In this document: positions 46,527 through 63,500 of the stretch, in pieces | Layout: each line of letters begins with the position of its first letter | Numbering within the stretch: the stretch's first letter is position 1 | Assembly: GCA_038496445.1 (NCBI GenBank) | Contig: JALMLS010000149.1 | Coordinates: 235,363-299,362, forward strand | Direction: 5' to 3' | From: Trichosphaerium sp. ATCC 40318 | Taxonomy: Eukaryota > Protista > Tubulinea | DNA: 64,000 nt | Notes under the pieces: model-generated | What the model saw: the letters and a program-made list of their open reading frames with translations, nothing else | What the model was told of the DNA's origin: nothing | The model's database searches: none | Position numbers and translations under genes: made by a program

Positions 46527-49500
46527 ATGGCGTGGAGGCAAGTACAAAAGCAGAACAACACCCGTCATGGTAAAGTGGGTTCCTCCCGGCCGGTTTCCGC
46601 TCAAAGCGGCTCTATCGCGTCTAACCCATTTATGCTGGCAAACAAGACCCAAAAATCATCAAACACAGCACCCAAAAGACCTTCATCGAGCTATCGTCCC
46701 AAACCATCATCAAAATTGCCTAGTTTTGGTTTTAGATCTAAATCAACTCCAAATAACGCCAAAAGAGCCAGCCTTCCAAATTCTCCCAAACGATCACCAG
46801 TTCAACCGAAACGCGTAACGCCTGCGCCATCATCTTCATTTCGTTCAATGTTCAACCGTAATGGAAACGGAAACTCTGCCACAGCAAGACCAAAAACAAC
46901 AAACGTCACTAAAACTTCAAAGAACAAGTTCTCGCCTTTGAAGGCTATTAAGCAAGTGGCTACGCAATATAAAGGAAGTGCAGTGTACAAGGATGAGCCA
47001 AACATTGACAAGCAGCTTCTAACTCAAATTAACGATCTATACAAGTTTGTAACGAAAAACGACGGTACAAATGACACCTCCGAACCTCGCCCGTTAAATA
47101 AAAATTTATTACAGGTTCTTCTTTAAAGTTAGGTCAGAAATTAGAGGGTACGCATTATTATGTTATCGGCGTAAGTTACGTACGTGTTTTGTAGAGTTGT
47201 TTCAGTCCGAAGATGAAAAGGTATACAACAACACTATTTACTTTGGGAATACGCTTCTTTCAAAGTCACAAGGTACATTGTCCATGTTAAAACCCATTTC
47301 GCGTCAGAAAAAGTGTTCATTTTTTTTGACATTTTTCTACAGCTGCTCCTGTACTTGTTGGACTTCTACTGTCGCAAAACGACACGTGTGTAGATCGTGT
47401 ACTATATGCTATTACTAATTCCGCGCGACAAGGTACGCTCCGTGACATTTCATGTATTTTTTGTTATGTTTCACTTGTTAATCGGGTTACCCTTTTGTAA
47501 AGATTTTGTCGTTGGCGAAGTATTATCTCTTGGTTTGAGCAAAGTCTTGAGTAGAATTTCTTCCCTTCCTACAATAAATAGTACTATAAAGTTTATGGTA
47601 AATTTCTTGGCCAACGGCACGTGCCATTTGTTAACAAATCATCGCTACAATATTGTAATTGATTATTTCTAGAACGTGCTATCTCGGCTCTTTTGAAGCA
47701 GTCTGGATTTCAGCATTTTGTAACAATGTTCTCAAAGGTGTGTGCATCATACTTGTATGTAATTGGTTCATTAACATAAGAAACAATAAGGCCTCAGAGG
47801 ATGAAGAGGCTTTTATTTTGTCCATCAAAGTTTTGAACAATTTAGTAGTTTACAGCGCCAAAACTGGTACGCTTAGTTGGTTTACTATTGTTTTGTGTGT
47901 TGGTCTTACTTTCGCGAAAGGTGACTCCAAAAAGAACTTTAGTTCATTTGCTACAAAGAAATTTTATATGCAGGTAAAGTCTATTTTAAAAAATGCAAAC
48001 ACGATGGAGTCAGAAGATGTTGCTTCTTTCTTGGCATCAATAGCAAATCTTGCCACTAGTAGTATGTGCAATTATATACGTCTCCACCACGCTAAACATT
48101 TATAGTACCTAATAGAGATATGATTAGAGATACAGGAAACATAGATGAATTAATGCGTATAGCTAATGACTCTAAGCTTATGAGCTATCCTCGTACATGC
48201 GAATATGTTATTATGTCTCTTGGGCATCTATTGGAAGATGGTATGTTAATACTGTTTTGCTTTTTTGTTACGTACAGCCTTTGTAACAATAACATTGTAG
48301 TTGATTGTGCAAGTATCATTATTCGTCATGAAGGCTTGCGTGTGATTATCAAGAATCTTAAATCGCAGAACGAAGACATTTTATCTGCTGCACTTGCAGC
48401 TATCATTAACTATGCTACAAAAGGTACCTTACACGTGATATTTTTTTTCAAGCAATTATTGTTTGTAATTTATTTGTTGATTTTCCTTTTTTCTAGATGG
48501 CGTTGAGAATTCTCTTCAACGGGCGGTTACTAATTCTGATTGGATGTCGCGGACTCTACCAAGTTTATTAAAATCAAAAAACGAAAAGATACGATTGAGA
48601 AGTGCTTGGGCAATATGTAATTTAACTATACATGATTCTCTTCATGAGCCTTTTGATAAGTATGGCGGATTAACAGCTGTATGTTTTCTTCCAATTAATT
48701 CTTGGGTGACTTTGTTTGTAACTCTATTTTAAGGTATTGGACGCCGCTAAGAGTGGTGACGTATCGAGTGAGGCCAAAAAGAAGATTGTAACTACTATAT
48801 ACCATCTATCAATATTTCATGATTCAATGAGGAATAAAGTGCTTGCTAAAGGTATATTATTATTATACGTACTAGCATTCATCTATATCTTAGGCGGTGT
48901 CACTGCTTTGAAGAAGGCTTTAGAGAGCCCTGTACAAATGCTTAAAGAAGAGGCAGCAAAGGCAATGGTTAATTTAACTACAGCTGAAAATTCAGAGGTA
49001 AATAGTCTGATTGGTTATTGTATCTTAACTTACATTTGTAGGAATACTTTATTAAGGAGCGTGCCATTCCACCTCTGGTTGACCTACTCAAAGATAAAAA
49101 GGCATCTCCAATAGCACATGAAGTAGCAACAGCAGCGCTTGGCAACTTAGCACTATCGGGTATTATCCATTGGTAATTCTTTATGAAGTAACTGTTCTTT
49201 GTAGAGGTCGCTGGAGAGGAAATGAGAAAAGCTGGTGTTATGGATGCTGCCCTAAGTGTCTTGCAAGATACTAAGCAAGCCAATGTTCAACAACGCTCTG
49301 CTAACTTGCTTGCTCGCTTGGCATTCAACAGTACTATTTTATCTATCCATTGTCAATGTACTAAACAAACTTAGGTAAAACACGTGAGGAGTTCCAAAAA
49401 GGTGAAGGCGAAAAAATTTTACAGGGCATAATGAGCAAATGTACTAAGAATACTCACTTGACTCAAACTTTAAAGGTCGCTCTCAACAATATGGCAGTAC

Positions 49501-52385: not shown

Positions 52386-53466
52386 ATGCGTCCATACAAC
52401 CCCACCAGTACATTTTATTTTATCATATACTCGGAGATTCTAACAAAACAAACTAGAAGTGCCAACAACTCAAACAACGCCACCATGGCAACCTACATCT
52501 GTCCAACGTACTACGCACGTGTCAAAAGGTATAAATAGTTAATTTTTTTATAAGCCGCCAAAATAAACAATCCACGTGATAACACTATTTTCTTTAGATA
52601 AAACAAGAGCTCTTTGTTATTTTAACTTATTTGGTGGTTGTAAAAATGGTGTCACGTGTAAATTTGATCACGAACTACACTCAAATCATATAAGACCTTC
52701 TATAAACTTCGCGGAACTAACACATAAGCTTCTTGTCGTGACACAGAAACATTGCTTTTTTAACTTTCAAGGAAGATGTACAAACCCAAGCTGCCCTTAT
52801 ACACATATATTAAAGAAGGATATGCTATCTAGCCAAGAATTACAAAACTTTCAAAAGATACAACGCGGTAAGAAGCAGATAAAGGGAGGATGGCCTTATT
52901 TTGTTTCTCCTTTCCCACAACAGCAACCATACGCTACAGGACTACCACATGCCGCTAATACTGCTTCATCAGAAGCAGTTAGACAAGGTTATTACGCTTA
53001 TTACTACGGACAATCACAAGATGGCACTGCTTATTCTGCTACATCACCTACGTCCGCTTCTACGCAGAAGAGAACTTATCCTATCGGCCCATATCGTAAT
53101 TCGTATGTTGGTGTCTACAGGTACCAAGATTTCTCGATTTTTTTTTAGCACACGTGATTTTTTTTTCGCTGATAGTTTTTTGTCTCTAGTAGCTATTATG
53201 GTGTTCAAATGCAACCCTCTCCTGGGTATCCAAGTACTTATTATCCTACAACAGCTACAACATCAACTCAGGTGAAGGCAGTAGATACAAGCTTGCTTGA
53301 TAAAACGGGTGATAAAAAGGAAACTGAAGGAGTTAAGGAAGAGGCAACGCCTGTATGGAGGCCAGGAGTTAAATTAACAATGGAAGATGTGAAAAAACAT
53401 GCCAACACTTACAGTGCAGCTCAAAAAACTGAAGAGACAACAAAAAAAAAGCAACAAGCAGAATAA
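52386..53466 (+). CDS. Tandem CCCH zinc-finger protein
   Basis: CYFNLFGGCKNGVTCKFDH and CFFNFQGRCTNPSCPYTH, followed by a Tyr/Gln-rich region. Confidence 0.85.
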
Positions 53467-54035: not shown

Positions 54036-57000
54036 ATGTCCTTGCGTAAACTATTTGATTCAGTAGGATTTACTGAAAAAGATGCTCTTCAGTATGTAGA
54101 ATTGTTCGAAGAGCACGATATCACCATTAATGAGTTGGATGAGCTTAATCACGAGTTACTGAAGGAGTTGGGGGTTAAGAAGATCGGTATTTACAGTTAA
54201 CAGTCCAATTAGTTACAAACCCTTTACTAGGCCACCGTATACGTATTCTGAAGATGGCGCCATCCAGAAATAAAGTACAACAGAATCAACCAGTCAGTAA
54301 CTCTGTACATCTCCCGCGTAGTATCACACAGCAGCTGGACCCTAATCTCGCGCTTCCTGTTACAAAGTCTCAAAGTGTATCAACCGACACCCAACCTGAG
54401 CCTGTTCTATCTCAAAATCTCATAAAAAAAGAGCCAGACAACACCTTACCACCCAAACTATCAAGCTTTCCTACAGGACAGGTAATAAGAACACCCTCCG
54501 GTCAAGCGCAAAAATTAACGCCGTTTAAGAGCGCTTCAATGCCTTGTAAAGCAGCCGTAACCGAATCACAGGTGTCCGTAAAGAAAGAAAAGCCTAGAAC
54601 ACCACTATGGTTCGAACGTTCCTCTGTCGACCCTCACCGTGTTCGTATTGTTTCGTTTTAATGCTAGAAGCGTTTATTTACTTAATTTCCCTTAGGACGT
54701 TACGCCAAGCCTTGTTACAAACTTGGGCGAGGACGCTGAGCAATACTTTATACTAGATCACAGAAAACTGAGCTGCGATGTCGTGGAACCAAAGGACGAT
54801 GAAGATAAAGCTTCAAAACCAAATCAAGGGCGTTCTTTGGAAGCATCTGATTCTTCTTCAGTTAGTTTCGATGATTCAGATGATGAGGATAGTGTTGAAG
54901 AAGTCACAGATGTACTTTGGTTTTTTTCTTGCTAAGTTTTTTTTTTGACCTTGTTCTTTCACTGTAGGCTATGGATGTCACTGATGTAGCCCAACTTCAA
55001 CTCAAAGCACCTCCGTCAAACCTCAGTAGTGGTACGTTGATTGGTTTCTTTGATAACAATTAATGACACGTGCGGTTTTTAGAGGAGGTTATTACTGTGA
55101 AGGATATTGACAAACTTGAAGAAAAAGTAAAGGCTAGCTTTAAGAATATTACACCCAGAAAACAACAATGGGAAACGGTATTCAGGCTCTTAGATGATGT
55201 TATGAAGCTACCTGGAGATAGAGTTAGCGATAAGGGTAACTACCTGATCCAACATGCAGCAGGCAAGCCAAGACAAACACGAACAACCATTAATTCTTAT
55301 TGTAGGTAGCGGAAAATCGATAACGATAGCATCTCTGGCTTATAATCTCTACCGGCTACAAGTATGTATAATTTCAAAAAACCACCGAGATATTATTGAT
55401 AATGTATTGGTTTAGACAGAGAGTGGTGAGAATATGTTCCACACAATCCTCATTCTTAATGACAGACGTCATTTGGACAAACAACTTAATACAGTTGTTA
55501 CTAGTTTCCTTCATATGCATAATGTATACGATGTTTCTCATGCAACAAATGCAAGACACTTACAACTCCTTTTAACCTCTGGATCATGGCGGTACTAACC
55601 CAGTTTTTTTTTCTAGTCAGTACTGTTTGTAACAGAACTCTATTTTTAACCTCTATGAATATTCTTTGACTTTTTTTTTTGTTTTAGTGTTGTTGTTACT
55701 ACTATTCAAAAATTTGGTCATTTGGCAATTCCTACCTTCTTCGATTCTAAGCACAGAATTGCTATCATTGCCGATGAGTGTCATAGAACGCATGTATGTA
55801 TTTTTTTGTGTTTTGTTTGGACATGTTGTTAAGTATAACAATGTTTAGGGGAAGATTGTTACAAGGCAATTACACAAGTTCCTTACTGGAGAAACACGGC
55901 AGTCTAAGCAGATCACTTACTTTAGTTTTACTTGTACACCTTCGCAAAACGCACTGGAGATGTTTGGTGTACCTGATAAAGGTCCAGAAAAGACTGTGTC
56001 TCCTTTTTACGTGTACTCAATGGAGGTAAGAGACAATTTTCCTTCAGAAAACATTTTGTTGTTGAACAACTCATGAACCTTATAGAATGCCATCAAAGAT
56101 GGCGTTATTCTGGATGTTCTATCGCATTATGCTACAGTTGGTTCTTTGACAAAATTAAAGCTAAAATCTGATGGTGAAGAGAGCAAGGTTTACAAGGCTG
56201 GTATGTTCTTTTGAAAATGCTTTTTGTTGTCCATCCATTTAACCATGATGCAAAGGTCTTGCTGCAACACGTGTATTATTAGCGCATACAAAACTTGACC
56301 AAGGCACTATCAACGCCAAGGCTTCATTTATGCTTGAGCATTATTTGGAGCAGTACACCAAACTGGCTACTCCTACGTTCATACCTAAAGCGATGGTTGT
56401 TACTGGTGGAAGAGCGCAGATTATTTTGTACAAAAAAGCGTTTGAGGACTTAATAGCAACACTACCAGAAGACCAGGTCCGTTCTTTAACGAAAACCTCC
56501 ACTGAGATCGCTTGTTTTCGTGCTTTGACTTTCTGATTTTTTTCTTATTTTAGAGATTCGGTATTGTTTGTGCCTTTACCCCATTTATTTACAAAGAAGA
56601 AGCACTATCCGAAAGAGATGTAAAGATAAATGGTTAGTACATATTTGAAGACTTTAATGTGATGGTGCGTCTTTATTTATTTTGTATTGTAGGTCCGTAT
56701 GCAAAGGATCCAGTTAGAGCCTTTAGAGCGTTACCCAATATTAAAATGGTCATTGTTGCAGAAAAGTTACGGACAGGTTTTGATGAGCCTTCATTAGCTT
56801 TTATGTACCTTGATAAGAAAATTACTGGATGTAGTGTTGTACAGACGCTTGGTAGGCTCAGCAGAGTTTGTCAGGTACTACTCAACGTCAGAAGTTGCCA
56901 TACTTTTTTTTTGCCTTCTAAACAAAATCTTTTAAGGGCAAACGACATGTTCATGTTGTTGATTTTGCAAACTCCAAATCTCAAATAGCAAGTACTTTCG

Positions 57001-60000
57001 CTAAATATTACGGTTCAACAACTCTCAAGTCCCTATGTGATGGTGAGGCCGAACCACAGATGCGACAGTTATTCCAGAAAATTATAGGTGTTCTAGGTAA
57101 TTACAAATTGGCATGTTTGGATTGGCGCTCGCCGTCCAGATTTCGCTTTTGTACTACTCCCCTTCTCACGTAATTATTAGGCGTCAAAGAAGAGAACATC
57201 CACCAGGTCATCGCTAATTTAGAACCTAGTAGTATGCGGAGATTGTTTAATCGCCTGTCTAAGTACTTTCAGTTCTGTAACAAGTAAGTATTTTCTTTTG
57301 AATTTCTCAACGGTTTTTTATTTAATTCAAGCCCTGTACTGATATCTATTTTTAGGTTACAGACTGAGATGGAAGGAGTAGATCATGCTTTCCTTCGTAA
57401 ACTACATCAGAGGATTCTAGTTGAACACGTGAAACGAAACTGTACGGATATCTTTTACCAAGCATTCCACAAAGCACTCATCTTTTTACAGTGCGAGCCA
57501 AGGCTATCTTAGATGAGATAACTGTTGATAATGTATCTGAACCAAAACTAATAAGCGAATACCCTTTATTGGATGATGTACTTGAAGTTGTGGCTAATTG
57601 CAAACACCTTCGCGTTAAAGCTAGCAAAAAAGGGGTACAAAACCAACTCAACAATTTCGTAACATATTTTCTCTTAGAGCATCATTACAATCAGGCAAGA
57701 TGACAAGGATCTTTCTCTTACACTCAAGGATATTGTACGTATTACGTGATTTACATTTCTTATTTATACTGGAGTAGGTGAGCATGGCAAATGCTTGGCA
57801 TGTTTCAACAGAACTTGATAGACATGAAGAGGATGGAGGAGATATTAAAAAAAAGCATCCTTCAACTACTCTCGAACAATTGCTCATCGCAGCAAAAGCC
57901 CTTAAGGCCAAGACAGAGACAGAGCCCACCAAAGCGCTGCCTTCTATGACTGTGCCTGATTTGAAAACATATATCGACCCTGGGGACATGCCTACGCTGG
58001 AAGACCTTAAAAATGTTTTTTCCAACCAACGCACAGAGTTGAAAAATACAATCGAAGTTTTGGCTTCTGATGTGCATGACAAGTCTGAAAAAGTACCTGA
58101 ACCTGATGCCATGGATGTAGGAGAGAATAACGTTGTTGAAGACGCTGTTGCTCCAAAAAGTATGGATAACGATCAAGTAATGACTGAAGCATTACCATCA
58201 AATGTTGAAAAGACAGGAGATGCGGATGCTAAAGATAAAGTCATGACAGACGTACTATCACTGCCTCCATCATCATTATCTCTACCTCTACCGCAACAAT
58301 CACGTCTGAAGAATATATCTGTACCTCAGCAGCCAAGTGTCACTAAAAAGCTTAACGACAGAACACCTATACATACCATACTTTCTGTACGTTCCTTTAC
58401 CCAGTAATTTTTTATTACCTTATTACATGTACCTCTTCTTCTTACACTTTCTTTAGCTCAAACGACCCAGTCACAGGATTGATAGAGAAACAGCAAAGAG
58501 AAAGTATGGTGATCACAGAACCGGTCCAATAATCCCGCCAAATTTGCCTCCTAAAAAAAAGGCTAAAGTGACTCCTCAGCCACAACCGCAACAACATATC
58601 AAAGTAGAACCTTCAGCAACAAACCCTAACTCGAGTAAACAAGCTAGAAAAGAACCAACAACACAGAACAGAAATAATACACATCTGTATCCAGCTGATG
58701 TACTAGAGATTGTAAGATCTTCAAAATGGGATGTAAGAAAAGAAGGCTTTCAGTATATTGCTGAGACTGATTGGGATAATTGGGTTCCTTTTGGTGAAGA
58801 TATTATAAGATACTTTAAAATATCACTTGAAAGCAAGGATAGCACACCAGAAGAGATAAATATGTGTTGTATGGCTATAGTATCTTTGTGTAAAGGTACG
58901 GTACATAATTTTTTAGTTCTACTTTTTTTTGAATTTTATGAGATACTTGCAACGTTCTATTATGCTTGAACTTGTTTCTATTTGCAATATTGCTCGTACT
59001 AATCGTGTATGTATTTCAATAGTCATGAGTGCATTCATGAAATTGAATTATACTGGTTGACTTTCGAGCTAACACAAAGTTGTTTTTGAAAACTGCTTTG
59101 ATCACGTGATTTTTGTTTGTTTTTTATCTACCTATGAATTTCTTTGTGCTTTCTTTCAACACATAACTAATTTGTTTTCTTTGTTTAGCTGGAATTTCGA
59201 GTAAGCATAAAGCAATGATACGTTCAGGAATGGTCCCAGCACTTTGTAGACATTTGGGAAGCATACCTTGTTCTGTTGCTGTTTTATTGGCACTGCTTCA
59301 AATTGAAACCTCCAGAACAGCAGCTACTAGACAAGTGAAGAATATAAGAGGTAAAAGATATTATAGATACAACTGTGCGCCGTTTTTGTTAACAATTGAA
59401 TGATTTTTGTTTGCTTGTGAAATGCTAAGTTGTTTAGATTCTCTTCATGTATCTTTACGTATTTGTGGTGGCTTGGAAAAACTTGTAGATATTGTAAAAC
59501 CAAATTCAAATCATCATAATGCAGCTAAAGTACATGGCATGGCGCTACTTCAGTACTCTGCCTTCAATCGTAAGTACAATCCCAGAATTATCTCAAAAAC
59601 TTTTTTATTTCTGTGTTGGTTGCTAAACAACCGTTCACCTTTAACTATTATTTGTTTCTGTTTGTATACTATCCTCTTGCTTCTTTCTCCATTATTTTTC
59701 TTTTTGACTAACGGTTATTAATAGAACAAAGTCAACCTTTGCTCGCAAGGCACTGGAAGATATGGTGTAGTTTTTTATCTTCACAAAACTTGGACAACGT
59801 AGAAAATGGATTGAGATTCTTATAAATATTGTTCGATCTATACAGAGATATATAAAGAGTAGTAGATCACGTGATCGTGGTAAAGAAGATATATTAAAGA
59901 GTATACAAGAGTATCCAAACTTGAAATCAAGGCTTAAGATATTATCTGATGCTGCACAGTTTTCAAAAAGAGCTGGTGTACTTATCAAGTTGGTTTATCC

Positions 60001-60118
60001 TAGTGGCTATATTGAACCTCCTAAGAGACTTGATCTTTGTTCTAATAAGTCAAGAAGGAGTGGTAGTTTAGATCTATTCTTACCTGTATGTTCTACTGTA
60101 CGAAAGAAAAAAAATTAA
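54036..60118 (+). CDS. SAM domain + Type I restriction HsdR-like SF2 ATPase/translocase + NLS + ARM-like C-terminal protein
   Basis: SAM: YVELFEEHDITINELDELNHELLKELGVKKIG|HRIRIL. HsdR motifs: NYLIQHAAG|SGKS, LNDRRHLDKQL, VTTIQKF, IADECHR, FTCTP, YSME|NAIKDGVILDVL, KAMVVT, IVAEKLRTGFDEP..MYLDK, VQTLGRLSR, VVDFAN. NLS PPKKKAKV. The exons join in frame to the stop. Confidence 0.88.
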
Positions 60119-60526: not shown

Positions 60527-63500
60527 TCAATCCGTCAGTTCGTTGACAAATGCCTTCAGGCGTGTCAATCCTTCCTTTAATGTTTCTTGGTTTGTTACAT
60601 ATGCAATACGAAACGCATTAGAGCAACCAAATCCAGTACCAGGTACTAATGCTACTTGATACGCTTGAAGAAAGGTGGAACAGAAATCCATATCAGAGTT
60701 AATCTTCCCTTGTATGACTTTCCCAAGAGGTCTACAAACAAAGTAAGATTGAATGAAATCACACTTAGAAACACTGTATCAAATATTATCGTCACGTGTA
60801 CACGTGCGACCGAAGTTCATTTCCGAACAAGAAAAAAACGTCGCCTTTGCGATTTTTAGGTACCTGTTATTGTAGGGAAAATGTAGAAGGCACCACGAGG
60901 TTCGTATAATCCTAGCCCAGGTATTGTTCGTAAAATACCCATCATTAGATTCTTTCTTGCTTTCATTTCTAGAACGTTTTCTTGAATCACCTGTAGAGTA
61001 GTAATCAAAAAAAAAGCCAAAGTGAGGGTATAAATGATATCTTACGTCGTATGGGAGTGCTAGTGCGTAAATTCCAGCATGTTGTGCAATACTTGAAGCA
61101 CATGAAGTAATCAATTGTTGGATCTTAAGGCACATTTTAACAATCTTTGCTGGTGCCGCCATGTAACTAATAAGAAACATTTAACGCAAGCATTATTTCA
61201 AAAATTACTAAAAGATGAAGGCTCAAACCAACTAATTACATACCCTAATCTTAGTCCAGTCATAGCATGCTTTACTGAAACCATTTATTGAAATGGTACG
61301 CTCCTTCATGCCTGTAGAGGTTATTAAAAACAATGCAAGTTTTATTGTTTACCTTTCAGTTTTGCAAATGAAACGTGCTTTGTGTCATCGAATAGAATGC
61401 GTTCATAAATCTCGTCACTATCATTACATTAATAAGAATAAAAGAACATGCGTACCTGACAACGTATATGTGTCGGTACTCAGGTCGCTCTAAAACTTCA
61501 GCTAGCGCTTCAAGATCTTCGCGAGAAAACACTGAAATAACAAAAAGTTAGTTTGACGCTTGTATTCCACCAACTTCACACTTCAAAACTTAACACTTAC
61601 CAGTGCCTAAACAAACCGTGAGTATTGGATTGGTATAAGTTTGTAAAAAACAAAGTGATAGTAAAGATGTAGCAGTGACATAGATGTACCTGTTGGATTG
61701 CAAGGGTTGCTGAACATTATAAGCTTTGTTTGACTGTTCAGTGCTTCTTCAATACCCTTGACTGGTAGGCTGTATCCTGATTCAACACTTGATTCAATAT
61801 AACGAGGAATACCCCTAGAGAAATGTATCATAGCAGGATAGCTAACCTAGGAATCCAATCAACAAATTGTTGTTAAACCAAATGTAAAAAAGTACTAACA
61901 TAGTATGGTTTTGGTATGACTACTTCATCTCCTGGACCTACAAGTGCCCTAACAGCTTCAAATAGTGCCTGCTTACCACCACTTGTTACAAGAATCTCAT
62001 TTGTTCCGTAATTCAACCCTTTTCTTTCGAGCAAGTGTTTTTGGATTGCATTGCGTAAATCCAAGGTACCAGCGCTCTAATCAAAATTAATTGTTGAGTT
62101 TTGAGGTTGGATTCTTACCTCAGTGTATAAAGTCTTTCCCTTTCCTACTGCTTCTACAACCGCTTCTTGTACTGCTTTTGGCATTGGGTAATCTGGTTCT
62201 CCAACATTGAACTTAATAATGGTTTGACCTGTTCGGAAAAAAATAAGAAAACCATTCTGTGTCAGTTATTTTCGACTTGCCTTGTTGTTCTAGCTCGATT
62301 CTTAGTTGGTTTACTGCCATTGTGGCTGAAGGTTGTATTGATGTTACATCATTACTAAACTCATGAACCAAGTCGTTTGTAGTTTCACGTTCTTTTGCAC
62401 GGAGTTGTGAATGAACAATTTCGACTGATTTTTTAAGGTTTTCAAGTACTTGGTGAGCATTTGGGTTGTACCTAGTTATGTCACTCAGGAACAATAGAAT
62501 GGAAAATAAACGCACTTGTAAAGACCAAAGTATAGATCGAAACTATCATGAATTGTATTCTCAACAAGACCAAGTAACATGTCAAAACCTTTTGTGTTTA
62601 TAGGCGTTTTCTCAACGTTCTACAACACGTGTCAAAAAATTCAATCTTCAATGAGTTAAACTTACCAATGCAGATAACATACGCCCTGTAGTGTGGGTAA
62701 TAAACTGGCTCTGAGCTCCCTACAAATGAAAGTTGTTAGATTGGTTTTGGTAGCTAGTTCTTTGTCATACAAATCTGTCGTGTTCTTCACAAGTCAATAC
62801 TTCCATCTTACAACCTTCTGAAGAGAACAAATCCAAAAAAGAGGAACATCTTGCGTCATTTGCAATACGGACTTTCTCATATACACATATGAGATCCTTC
62901 CTAGTGGAGGAGAAGTGTCAATCAAGAAAGTTATCAAGAAAATGTTATTTCTTACCAAGAATTCTTCCCTGAATCAGGACCGAACATGGGATGTGTGCAA
63001 AGTCTTTGTACCGCGTAAGATATTTTAAAGTATTATGGAAGCTTTGACGTACATATCAGCAGAAGAAGGAAGATGTTCTGTGAGGATCTCTGAAAAAGAA
63101 AACTGTAAGTGAATACTATATTTATAGCTATCAACAGCTAGTGCACGTGCCTTTAGGATGACATTTTACAGAAAGTACGTCGACCACTAACCGGTCTGCA
63201 AATTTATCCAAAGGGAGACTATAGACTAGTCGTTAGCGGCGTTTCCAGTGAACAGCTTCAAAGATCATTAAATGCCATACCTTAAGAGAACCGATTTAAA
63301 TGATAGAATACTGACAGCCAGTATGACGCAATCTATTTTCTAAGGAGAGGGTTTTGAGCGCATTTCGTAATTTGACATACGCGTACCTCTTCAAAGAACT
63401 TGTTTGCCTCATCGTAGCGATAATAGCGCTTAATACCACACTCCTAATCGTGTGTTAGCGTCATAACGTCGAGGGTTAAAATTACGTGTAAATGTAGTGA

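What the first reader, a model, noticed from the sequence alone, without database searches (positions are those of the whole stretch)
54036..60118. Domesticated Type I restriction motor: SAM-HsdR translocase-ARM fusion in a eukaryote
Seen: an intron-rich gene, with an intron even inside Walker A, encodes an N-terminal SAM domain and then an SF2 core carrying HsdR-specific signatures (YLIQHAAGSGKS, DR..LD.QL, TTIQKF, DECHR, AI.DG.ILDVL, TGFDEP..MYLDK, QT.GRL.R, VDFAN). An SV40-like NLS (PPKKKAKV) and ARM-like helices follow. The PD-(D/E)xK nuclease that precedes the motor in bacterial HsdR is absent and is replaced by SAM plus a low-complexity linker. No HsdM or HsdS is present in the window. 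Known: HsdR is the ATP-driven dsDNA translocase of bacterial anti-phage Type I restriction-modification systems, and SAM domains head the eukaryotic antiviral proteins SAMD9 and SAMHD1. Inference: a prokaryotic defence motor repurposed as a nuclear, possibly oligomerising, DNA-scanning factor, for example against giant viruses or in chromatin remodelling. I know of no characterised protein with this architecture.
Basis: partly seen in the sequence, partly recalled or inferred. Interest (0 to 1): 0.9.

Follow-up and report, generated by a model that had tools for sequence, protein, structure and literature searches.

The report
Nuclease-less restriction-enzyme motor gene in amoebae
This amoeba gene is real, spliced and transcribed, and it encodes only the DNA-pulling motor of a bacterial Type I restriction enzyme, joined to eukaryotic protein-binding modules; the same uncharacterised family occurs across amoebae.

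Summary
Window 54036-60118 (+) is one 24-exon gene. Spliced RNA contigs confirm ten of its 23 introns, including a 43-nt GC-AG intron inside the Walker A codons.

The protein has these parts, in order:
- a SAM domain;
- a disordered linker;
- a complete HsdR-type SF2 motor (Pfam PF18766 + PF22679);
- a helical region;
- a long linker with PPKKKAKV;
- a helical-repeat tail.

A profile of 16 eukaryotic relatives hits only EcoR124I HsdR in the PDB (E 1.6e-32). The nuclease domain and the bacterial C-terminal region are undetectable. No hsdM or hsdS lies in the window.

The gene is not a one-off. About 30 nuclease-less relatives form one clade against 47 bacterial HsdRs (support 100). They span the Amoebozoa, and a sister group fused to TFIIS domains is mostly from green algae. 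Echinamoeba has the same SAM+motor layout in one ORF.

The ARM assignment for this tail is weak: sub-threshold Pfam hits plus three intron positions shared with Balamuthia's ARM tail. The assembly lacks one base at 59809/59810 relative to a relative's transcript.

Most likely function: a nuclear, non-cutting dsDNA translocase loaded through protein partners. An antiviral role is unsupported. I found no paper on the family. The scan noted this gene type before (s1-383659).

The parts
54036..60118 (+). Whole gene: 24 exons and 23 short introns. It encodes about 1,457 aa when read with the extra T of transcript X1, and 1,359 aa as assembled (stop at 59823-59825).
   Evidence: Gene model. Ten splice joints seen in RNA contigs. 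The helicase exons give single unbroken BLAST HSPs to full-length homologues.
54036..54270 (+). SAM domain (about aa 1-64), split by a 44-nt intron at 54187-54230.
   Evidence: Exon 1 alone scores SAM_2 E 1.6e-5, 25.4 bits, above the 20.5 cut-off. phmmer against the SAM ends of Echinamoeba P0157 and P0028 gives E 1e-11 and 1.6e-10; both carry Pfam SAM_1 and SAM_2.
54271..55153 (+). Low-complexity linker rich in S, V, D, P and K, occupying the place of the bacterial nuclease domain. It contains the RNA-supported 48-nt in-frame intron at 54482-54529.
   Evidence: No Pfam hit. Composition. An HMM of bacterial HsdR N-termini does not match (E 2.2), while bacterial controls score 1e-70 to 1e-112. 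Joint 54479>54528.
55154..56200 (+). Motor lobe 1 (RecA-like): Q-like PRKQQ at 55154, Walker A AAGSGKS at 55256-55319, DECH box at 55773-55787, motif III FTCTPS at 55927-55944.
   Evidence: Pfam SWI2_SNF2 PF18766 and ResIII on exon pieces. Motif coordinates. Profile A1 aligns to EcoR124I HsdR residues 270-797.
55263..55305 (+). 43-nt GC-AG intron interrupting the glycine codon of Walker A (phase 1).
   Evidence: RNA contig from run X2 skips 43 nt here. The joint is reported as 55260>55304 with 3 ambiguous letters, which is the same as 55263-55305 with GC..AG ends. Sequence.
56256..56972 (+). Motor lobe 2: KAMVVTGGR at 56387, motif V TGFDEP at 56773-56790, motif VI QTLGRLSR at 56842-56865, VDFAN at 56958-56972.
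   Evidence: Pfam T1R_D3-like PF22679 E 3.8e-9. NCBIfam hsdR TIGR00348 E 7e-10 and PADLOC REase_I E 2.5e-8 on the 60-aa exon.
56973..57734 (+). Post-motor helical region, conserved within the eukaryotic clade and not recognisably the bacterial MTase-docking region.
   Evidence: Consensus continues past VDFVN in A1. The AlphaFold model of the orthologous Echinamoeba stretch is helical there. An HMM of the bacterial C-terminal 265 aa finds no eukaryotic member at E below 0.09.
57778..58681 (+). Long disordered linker with the SV40-like basic motif PPKKKAKV at 58547-58570.
   Evidence: No Pfam hit. All 6 substitutions against transcript X1 in 57819-58169 change the amino acid, and there is a 3-nt indel. 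Motif coordinates.
58682..60118 (+). C-terminal helical-repeat tail, ARM-like but unproven, in five exons.
   Evidence: Arm E 0.034 and ARM_ARMC5 E 0.17, both below cut-off. Three phase-1 introns fall in the same alignment columns as three introns of Balamuthia's Pfam-supported ARM tail. Six of 7 substitutions against X1 are synonymous.
59809..59810 (+). Frame break: one base is missing here relative to the X1 transcript (T after 59809). As assembled, the reading stops at 59823-59825.
   Evidence: 'put in behind T' at 59809 in an X1 contig of depth 26. The reading after the break aligns with the C-termini of the Balamuthia and dictyostelid homologues.

Best explanation
The locus is one nuclear, spliced, transcribed gene for a protein of about 1,450 aa. 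It keeps only the two-lobed ATP-driven dsDNA-translocase motor of a bacterial Type I restriction subunit (HsdR).

The N-terminal nuclease and the C-terminal region of the bacterial relatives are gone; in EcoR124I that C-terminal region docks the methyltransferase (my own knowledge). In their place are a SAM domain, two disordered linkers, a basic NLS-like motif and a helical-repeat tail.

The gene belongs to a single eukaryotic offshoot of HsdR that is old within Amoebozoa. A sister group of that offshoot is fused to TFIIS domains and is found mostly in green algae.

Shown here:
- gene structure and transcription;
- HsdR-type motor with every ATPase motif intact;
- loss of the nuclease across the whole clade;
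- monophyly and taxonomic spread of the clade.

Inferred:
- The protein hydrolyses ATP to move along, or pull, duplex DNA in the nucleus without cutting it.
- Because no HsdM/HsdS can load it, it is brought to DNA by protein partners through its SAM and repeat modules.
- Modules fused in relatives (TFIIS domains I and II, Surp, ARM repeats most like ARMC5) suggest the partner is the RNA polymerase II transcription or RNA-processing machinery.
- SAM self-association could pair two motors, as in a Type I complex.
For: Gene and RNA: ten spliced joints and tiling contigs covering 56935-57253 and 57576-60035. Neighbours are ordinary eukaryotic genes: a CCCH zinc-finger gene upstream and a class I/II aminotransferase downstream.

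Motor identity:
- Pfam PF18766 and PF22679.
- TIGR00348 hsdR is the best NCBIfam hit of every relative tested, covering profile positions about 243-671 of 674.
- PADLOC's best hits are REase_I, covering positions about 285-700 of 1029.
- Profile A1 hits only EcoR124I HsdR in the PDB, E 1.6e-32, residues 270-797.
- Foldseek ranks EcoR124I HsdR in its top 15 places, E 1e-16, for a pLDDT 86 model of the Echinamoeba orthologue.
- Motifs I, II, III, V and VI are intact and nearly invariant in the clade.

Losses: HMMs of the bacterial N-terminus and C-terminus hit none of the 29 eukaryote-type proteins (E above 0.09), while bacterial controls score 1e-56 to 1e-112.

Family:
- 29, then 31, eukaryote-type rows lie on one side of a branch with SH-aLRT 100, against 36, then 47, bacterial HsdRs.
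- Members are Dictyostelia, Balamuthia, Thecamoeba, Echinamoeba, Pyxidicula, Pelomyxa, Mastigella and Entamoeba.
- An intron at model aa 344 (phase 0) is shared with Balamuthia.

One gene: Echinamoeba P0157 aligns to model residues 3-881 in one HSP.

Functional hints: TFIIS N and M, Surp and ARM/ARM_ARMC5 are fused in relatives. ARMC5 targets Pol II (PMC10789052, PMC7617427).
Against: - No biochemical or localisation data exist for any member.
- As I recall, bacterial HsdR alone translocates poorly and needs the methyltransferase core to load it; a stand-alone motor may work differently or not at all.
- The Pol II link comes from relatives, not from this protein. The ARM_ARMC5 hits are far below Pfam's cut-off (36.6 against 79.9 bits).
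- This protein's tail shows no significant sequence similarity to those tails.
- No RNA contig covers 55436-56835, and none joins the SAM exons to the motor exons in this organism.
- This assembled copy carries a frame break in its last exon.
- Rigid-body structure comparison does not separate HsdR (Z 18.8) from RadD (Z 21.0), FANCM, Mfd or RIG-I.
Confidence: 0.6

Rival explanations
1. Antiviral or anti-foreign-DNA factor. The motor scans DNA of giant viruses or other invaders, and SAM-driven oligomerisation triggers a response.
For: The ancestor is a defence enzyme. Amoebae host giant viruses (general knowledge). The linker changes fast between close strains: 6 of 6 substitutions change the amino acid.
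Against: The nuclease effector is lost in every member. No specificity or modification partner lies in the window. The motor is highly conserved across very distant amoebae. I saw at most two paralogues per species, in two dictyostelids; this was not surveyed systematically. Fusions in relatives are to housekeeping transcription and splicing modules. No relative was found in viral contigs. SAM is too common a domain to imply immunity.
Confidence: 0.15
2. RNA or RNP remodeller rather than a DNA motor. The Surp fusions in relatives, and SAM domains that bind RNA in some proteins (Vts1/Smaug; my own knowledge), suggest action on transcripts or R-loops.
For: Surp modules in the long dictyostelid paralogues and in two metagenomic members. 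The fold is also close to RIG-I-like and DEAD-box helicases by rigid alignment.
Against: Sequence profiles place the motor only with HsdR, a dsDNA translocase. The HsdR-specific motifs are retained.
Confidence: 0.1
3. This particular copy is a decaying or non-functional allele. The frame break at 59809/59810 removes the last ~100 residues.
For: One base is missing relative to the X1 transcript, giving a stop at 59823-59825. The region after the break is homologous to the C-termini of relatives.
Against: It is the only defect in 4.4 kb of coding sequence. The gene is transcribed and spliced in runs 99% or more identical to the window. The tail shows mostly synonymous differences, including one after the break.
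Confidence: 0.1
4. Bacterial contamination or a very recent horizontal transfer.
For: The closest non-eukaryotic relatives are bona fide hsdR genes in hsdM-hsdS-hsdR operons.
Against: There are 23 spliceosomal introns, ten confirmed in RNA. GC content matches the rest of the window. Flanking genes are eukaryotic. Identity is 38-43% to amoebozoan proteins and about 31% to bacterial ones. An intron position is shared with Balamuthia.
Confidence: 0.01

Closest known systems
HsdR, the restriction/translocase subunit of bacterial Type I restriction-modification enzymes (EcoR124I HsdR, PDB 2w00; TIGR00348)
   Same: Both RecA-like motor lobes carry the family's signature motifs. HsdR is the only PDB family hit by the clade profile (E 1.6e-32, residues 270-797) and the top Foldseek match. 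The best NCBIfam and PADLOC models are hsdR and REase_I.
   Different: There is no PD-(D/E)xK nuclease, no detectable bacterial C-terminal region, and no hsdM/hsdS nearby. Scores fall below the TIGR00348 cut-off. The gene is eukaryotic with introns, and SAM, linkers, an NLS-like motif and a repeat tail have been added.
Uncharacterised amoebozoan homologues: Echinamoeba exundans EP01122_P016117 (P0157), Balamuthia mandrillaris KAL6056802.1 (P0153), Tieghemostelium lacteum KYQ93880.1 (P0020)
   Same: They share the nuclease-less HsdR motor at 38-43% identity. P0157 also has SAM+motor+tail in one ORF. P0153 also has a C-terminal ARM tail and shares intron positions with this gene.
   Different: The accessory modules vary: Surp in the long dictyostelid forms, none detected by Pfam in the short forms and in Entamoeba. 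The window protein's tail has no significant sequence similarity to theirs.
TFIIS-fused HsdR-type motors of green algae (Cymbomonas tetramitiformis KAK3262227.1; an ESM Atlas cluster of 53 eukaryotic members)
   Same: They form the sister clade of nuclease-less motors within the same eukaryotic branch.
   Different: They carry C-terminal TFIIS domains I and II instead of SAM and ARM.
Eukaryotic SWI2/SNF2 remodellers and MORC ATPases, the known cases of restriction-system ATPases recruited to chromatin (PMC3417536)
   Same: The evolutionary theme is the same: an ATPase from prokaryotic restriction systems reused in the nucleus without its nuclease.
   Different: This is a different SF2 family. 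The clade profile hits no Snf2 structure at E 0.001 or better, and Snf2 proteins rank well below HsdR in Foldseek.

Membership tests
Type I restriction enzyme R subunit (HsdR) | SF2 motor with HsdR-type lobes (Pfam PF18766 + PF22679) | tested here: met
   Exon pieces score PF18766 E 9e-6 and PF22679 at 37.6 bits against a cut-off of 27. The clade profile hits only EcoR124I HsdR in the PDB.
Type I restriction enzyme R subunit (HsdR) | N-terminal PD-(D/E)xK nuclease domain (PF04313 HSDR_N) | tested here: not met
   No Pfam hit in aa 60-290. An HMM of bacterial N-termini scores E 2.2 on this protein and above 0.3 on all 29 clade members, against 1e-70 to 1e-112 for controls. PF04313 is absent from all the eukaryotic hits I identified and present in nearly all bacterial ones.
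Type I restriction enzyme R subunit (HsdR) | C-terminal helical/CTD region that binds the HsdM2S methyltransferase | tested here: not met
   An HMM of the bacterial C-terminal 265 aa finds no clade member at E below 0.09, while controls score 1e-56 to 1e-108. Fast-evolving helical domains could escape detection.
Type I restriction enzyme R subunit (HsdR) | Partner genes hsdM and hsdS | tested here: not met
   tblastn of a Campylobacter HsdM and HsdS against the 64-kb window gives E > 2. The rest of the genome was not searchable.
Type I restriction enzyme R subunit (HsdR) | Score above the curated TIGR00348 cut-off (284.55 bits) | tested here: not met
   Relatives score 130-185 bits and cover only profile positions about 243-671. 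The genuine bacterial P0159 also scores below the cut-off (215 bits) but covers positions 19-672.
SAM domain proteins | Match to SAM_1/SAM_2 above the Pfam cut-off | tested here: met
   Exon 1 alone scores SAM_2 at 25.4 bits against a cut-off of 20.5. It is homologous to the SAM ends of P0157 and P0028.
Armadillo-repeat proteins | Arm repeats above the Pfam cut-off, or an ARM superhelix fold | tested here: inconclusive
   Arm scores 14.7 bits against a cut-off of 20.6, and ARM_ARMC5 scores E 0.17. phmmer, HMM and hhalign against homologues' ARM tails give nothing. Three intron positions are shared with Balamuthia's ARM tail. The fold was not predicted, because the spliced tail has no reference.
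SWI2/SNF2 chromatin remodellers proper | Closest relationship to Snf2-family motors | tested here: not met
   No Snf2 chain is hit by the clade profile at E 0.001 or better. Foldseek gives Snf2 entries E of about 1e-10 against 1e-16 for HsdR.

The most novel reading that the evidence does not exclude
A so-far undescribed, ancient eukaryotic family of dsDNA translocases derived from the Type I restriction motor. This would be a further, independent recruitment of a restriction-system ATPase to the nucleus, alongside SWI2/SNF2 and MORC. The motors would work with RNA polymerase II, tethered by TFIIS domains in green algae and by ARM, Surp or SAM modules in amoebae. They might clear or rescue stalled polymerase, or extrude DNA loops, with SAM pairing two motors as in a Type I complex.
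Probability: 0.25. Interest if true: 0.8.

Novelty: new variant of a known kind. Interest (0 to 1): 0.6.

Why it matters
Type I restriction motors are among the best-studied dsDNA translocases, but I found no paper describing a eukaryotic branch of them. This gene and its relatives show that the bare motor, without nuclease and without methyltransferase docking, has been kept under selection across very distant amoebae and in green algae. In each lineage it is rewired with nuclear protein-interaction modules.

If the motor is active, it raises a clear mechanistic question: what loads an HsdR motor onto DNA when HsdM and HsdS are absent? It would also add an untested player to eukaryotic transcription or chromatin biology. 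The dictyostelids that carry the family may be a practical place to test this.

Tried and rejected
- Viral origin: a scan of IMG/VR viral contigs with the motif V-VI exon found no relative.
- Tail homology: phmmer of the tail and the middle linker against all fetched homologues found nothing. An HMM of four ARM tails against the window tail scored E 0.026 at -0.2 bits, which is meaningless. hhalign of three tail exons against alignment A3 gave probabilities under 1%.
- Rigid-body structural alignment (pdb_via) does not single out HsdR. RadD, FANCM, Mfd and RIG-I all reach Z 18-21, so fold alone cannot place the family.
- Single-exon phmmer against the PDB gave only E 0.17 to HsdR. The clade profile was needed.
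- A findings look-up by sequence was blank.
- Six literature searches found no description of eukaryotic HsdR-derived proteins. The review PMC3417536 covers SWI2/SNF2 and MORC but not this family.
- My first model read through the 48-nt intron at 54482-54529. RNA corrected it.
- I could not find a legitimate intron to bridge the frame change near 59810. The cause is a 1-nt difference from transcript X1.
- Not done: folding the window's own spliced protein or tail. 

Full report
1. What is in the sequence.
Window 54036-60118 (+) reads as a 24-exon gene. It has 23 introns of 43-293 nt (median 56). All are GT-AG except one GC-AG intron of 43 nt (55263-55305), which splits the glycine codon of the Walker A motif AAGSGKS.

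GC content (about 0.38) matches the rest of the window. The neighbours are ordinary eukaryotic genes: a CCCH zinc-finger gene upstream (52576-53466) and a class I/II aminotransferase on the minus strand downstream (60527-62515).

2. Transcription.
Contigs of three public runs were laid on 54036-60035. Runs X2 and X4 are 99% or more identical to the window. Run X1 is about 1-2% diverged, so it is a close strain or relative.

They show ten spliced joints that match the model:
- 54482-54529, a 48-nt in-frame intron that I had first read through;
- the Walker A GC-AG intron;
- 57097-57180, 57635-57677, 57735-57777, 58387-58456, 58896-59188, 59351-59437 and 59570-59724;
- a tenth joint implied at 54640/54696.

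The contigs tile 56935-57253 and 57576 to beyond 60035. The last motor exon, the linker, the NLS-like motif and the tail are therefore on connected RNA, apart from a 320-nt gap.

No contig covers 55436-56835, and none joins the SAM exons to the motor exons. These are contigs, so a hole proves nothing.

3. A frame break.
An X1 contig of depth 26 has an extra T after 59809. Without it, as in the window, translation stops at 59823-59825 and ~100 residues are lost.

The reading after the break aligns with the C-termini of the Balamuthia and dictyostelid homologues. It also carries a synonymous difference to X1. The long frame is therefore the ancestral one. Whether the window has an assembly error or a real mutation cannot be told, because X2 does not reach that site.

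4. Domains.
- Pfam on single exons gives SAM_2 (25.4 bits, cut-off 20.5), SWI2_SNF2 PF18766 (E 9e-6), ResIII, and T1R_D3-like PF22679 (37.6 bits, cut-off 27).
- NCBIfam and PADLOC give hsdR (TIGR00348) and REase_I for the motif V-VI exon.
- The two linkers have no Pfam hit and are low-complexity.
- The tail gives only sub-threshold Arm (14.7 bits) and ARM_ARMC5 (E 0.17) hits.

5. Relatives.
A full-library phmmer search with the 60-aa motif V-VI exon found 1,163 proteins at E 0.001 or better. The best full-length ones align to model residues about 265-790 in single HSPs at 38-43% identity. This validates the helicase exons.

They come from Amoebozoa:
- Dictyostelia: Tieghemostelium, Polysphondylium, Dictyostelium purpureum, Cavenderia, Synstelium, Heterostelium, Acytostelium;
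- Balamuthia;
- Thecamoeba;
- Echinamoeba;
- Pyxidicula;
- Pelomyxa;
- Mastigella;
- three Entamoeba species.

None of these eukaryotic hits carries PF04313 (HSDR_N), whereas nearly all bacterial hits do.

Echinamoeba P0157 (a complete Trinity ORF of 1,347 aa) has SAM_1/SAM_2 plus the motor plus a tail. It aligns to model residues 3-881 in one HSP.

A Logan contig (L002) carries an intronless SAM+motor gene between eukaryotic genes. Its next ORF is the continuation of the same protein.

These two cases are the best evidence that SAM and motor belong to one protein here too.

6. It is HsdR-type, not another SF2 family.
- A profile of 16 eukaryotic cores (A1) hits only EcoR124I HsdR among 177,635 PDB sequences (E 1.6e-32, HsdR residues 270-797). 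That span is the two motor lobes and the start of the helical domain.
- An AlphaFold model of the Echinamoeba core (pLDDT 86.4, pTM 0.84) has EcoR124I HsdR as its 15 best Foldseek matches, at E 1e-16 to 8e-12. RadD, Type ISP LlaBIII and Snf2 enzymes follow at about 1e-11 to 1e-10.
- Rigid-body alignment does not discriminate: RadD reaches Z 21.0 and HsdR Z 18.8, though HsdR has the longest alignment, 411 residues.
The placement therefore rests on sequence profiles, not on fold.

7. What was lost.
- An HMM of the N-terminal region of 36 bacterial relatives scores 1e-70 to 1e-112 on held-out bacterial HsdRs. It scores E above 0.3 on all 29 eukaryote-type proteins, including the window's.
- An HMM of the bacterial C-terminal 265 residues behaves the same way: controls 1e-56 to 1e-108, eukaryotes above 0.09.
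- TIGR00348 and PADLOC REase_I alignments cover only the middle of those models.
- The bacterial relatives are genuine. P0159 of Campylobacter coli lies in an hsdM-hsdS-orf-hsdR operon. Its HsdM and HsdS find nothing in the window, while its HsdR finds the gene's exons.

8. Phylogeny and age.
In maximum-likelihood trees of the motor (quick search, LG+C20), all eukaryote-type rows lie on one side of a branch with SH-aLRT 100:
- 29 rows against 36 bacterial HsdRs;
- 31 rows against 47 bacterial HsdRs from two independent searches.

Inside, an amoebozoan group is sister to a group fused to TFIIS domains I and II. That group includes Cymbomonas and EukProt and metagenomic sequences. An ESM Atlas cluster of 53 members, all eukaryotic and mostly Chlorophyta, has the same architecture.

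The window protein sits in the amoebozoan group near Pyxidicula and a sequence from a Schistocerca scaffold. Its highest identity is 42%, to Balamuthia.

Caveats: the root is not inferred, several branches are long, and the bacterial sampling is limited to the best hits.

Intron positions add weight. The intron after model aa 343 (phase 0) lies in the same column and phase as a Balamuthia intron. Three phase-1 introns of the tail coincide with three Balamuthia introns that delimit its Pfam-supported Arm repeat (aa 1460-1500).

9. The tail.
Direct sequence tests of homology between this tail and the ARM tails of relatives all failed. Identity in the MAFFT alignment is 20%.

Against that:
- three intron positions coincide;
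- the tail has the same C-terminal position;
- weak Arm hits fall on the exons that align with Balamuthia's repeats.

I therefore call the tail ARM-like, probable but unproven. I could not fold it, because a spliced sequence has no reference.

10. Selection.
Against X1, the six substitutions in the linker (57819-58169) all change the amino acid, and there is a 3-nt indel. In the tail, six of seven are synonymous. The numbers are small. The pattern fits a free linker and a constrained tail.

11. Mechanism.
Shown: an intact ATPase motor of the dsDNA-translocase type, no nuclease, no detectable bacterial C-terminal (MTase-docking) region, a SAM domain, and a basic PPKKKAKV motif.

Inferred: a nuclear, non-cutting dsDNA translocase that is brought to DNA by protein partners.

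The modules fused to the same motor in relatives are TFIIS N and M, Surp, and ARM repeats most like ARMC5. ARMC5 targets Pol II (PMC10789052, PMC7617427). These fusions point to the Pol II transcription or RNA-processing machinery, but this is guilt by association from other species. A defence role is not excluded, but no observation here supports it.

12. Novelty.
Six full-text searches found no description of eukaryotic HsdR-derived proteins. The review of restriction-system contributions to eukaryotic chromatin covers SWI2/SNF2 and MORC only (PMC3417536). Orthologues are in public databases as hypothetical or auto-named proteins.

The scan itself noted the same kind of gene on another piece of this genome and reached the same family-level reading (s1-383659). 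I re-derived that independently here.

Noticed in passing
window 59809-59825: There is a one-base difference from a relative's transcript (extra T after 59809 in X1). It truncates the assembled ORF by ~100 residues. This is either an assembly error or a broken allele.
   Followed up: partly
window 54482-54529: A 48-nt in-frame intron with no stop codon. It is removed in an X2 RNA contig, and a plain ORF reading would keep it. It could be an alternatively retained intron.
   Followed up: partly
L004:10001-14711 (Schistocerca gregaria scaffold JAKZLS010000121.1): The locust assembly holds an amoebozoan-type nuclease-less HsdR motor gene (XP_049848085.1), the nearest row to the window protein by tree path. 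It lies among small, densely packed genes. This looks like a protist scaffold in the insect assembly rather than an insect gene.
   Followed up: partly
P0262, P0186, P0162, P0169, P0219; ESM Atlas cluster: The sister clade of nuclease-less HsdR motors carries C-terminal TFIIS domains I and II. It is found mostly in green algae (53-member Atlas cluster). This is an uncharacterised architecture that links the motor to RNA polymerase II.
   Followed up: partly
L002:8001-12142 (Logan SRR10663366): An intronless SAM+motor gene of an unidentified eukaryote is called as two ORFs overlapping by 4 nt. The second ORF aligns with the Echinamoeba post-motor region and tail, so there is a frameshift or a tiny intron at the VVDF motif.
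   Followed up: partly
window 57819-58169 versus 58525-59935: Against transcript X1, all six linker substitutions are non-synonymous and there is a 3-nt indel. Six of seven tail substitutions are synonymous.
   Followed up: yes
window 46527-49114 (+): A separate multi-exon gene has an Arm-repeat hit (E 5.8e-4, 20.3 bits, just under the cut-off) and a long S/P/K-rich N-terminal ORF. It was not studied.
   Followed up: no
L003:2991-10949 (Campylobacter coli): The bacterial relative lies in an hsdM-hsdS-hsdR operon with an extra 601-aa ORF that has no Pfam hit, between hsdS and hsdR.
   Followed up: no
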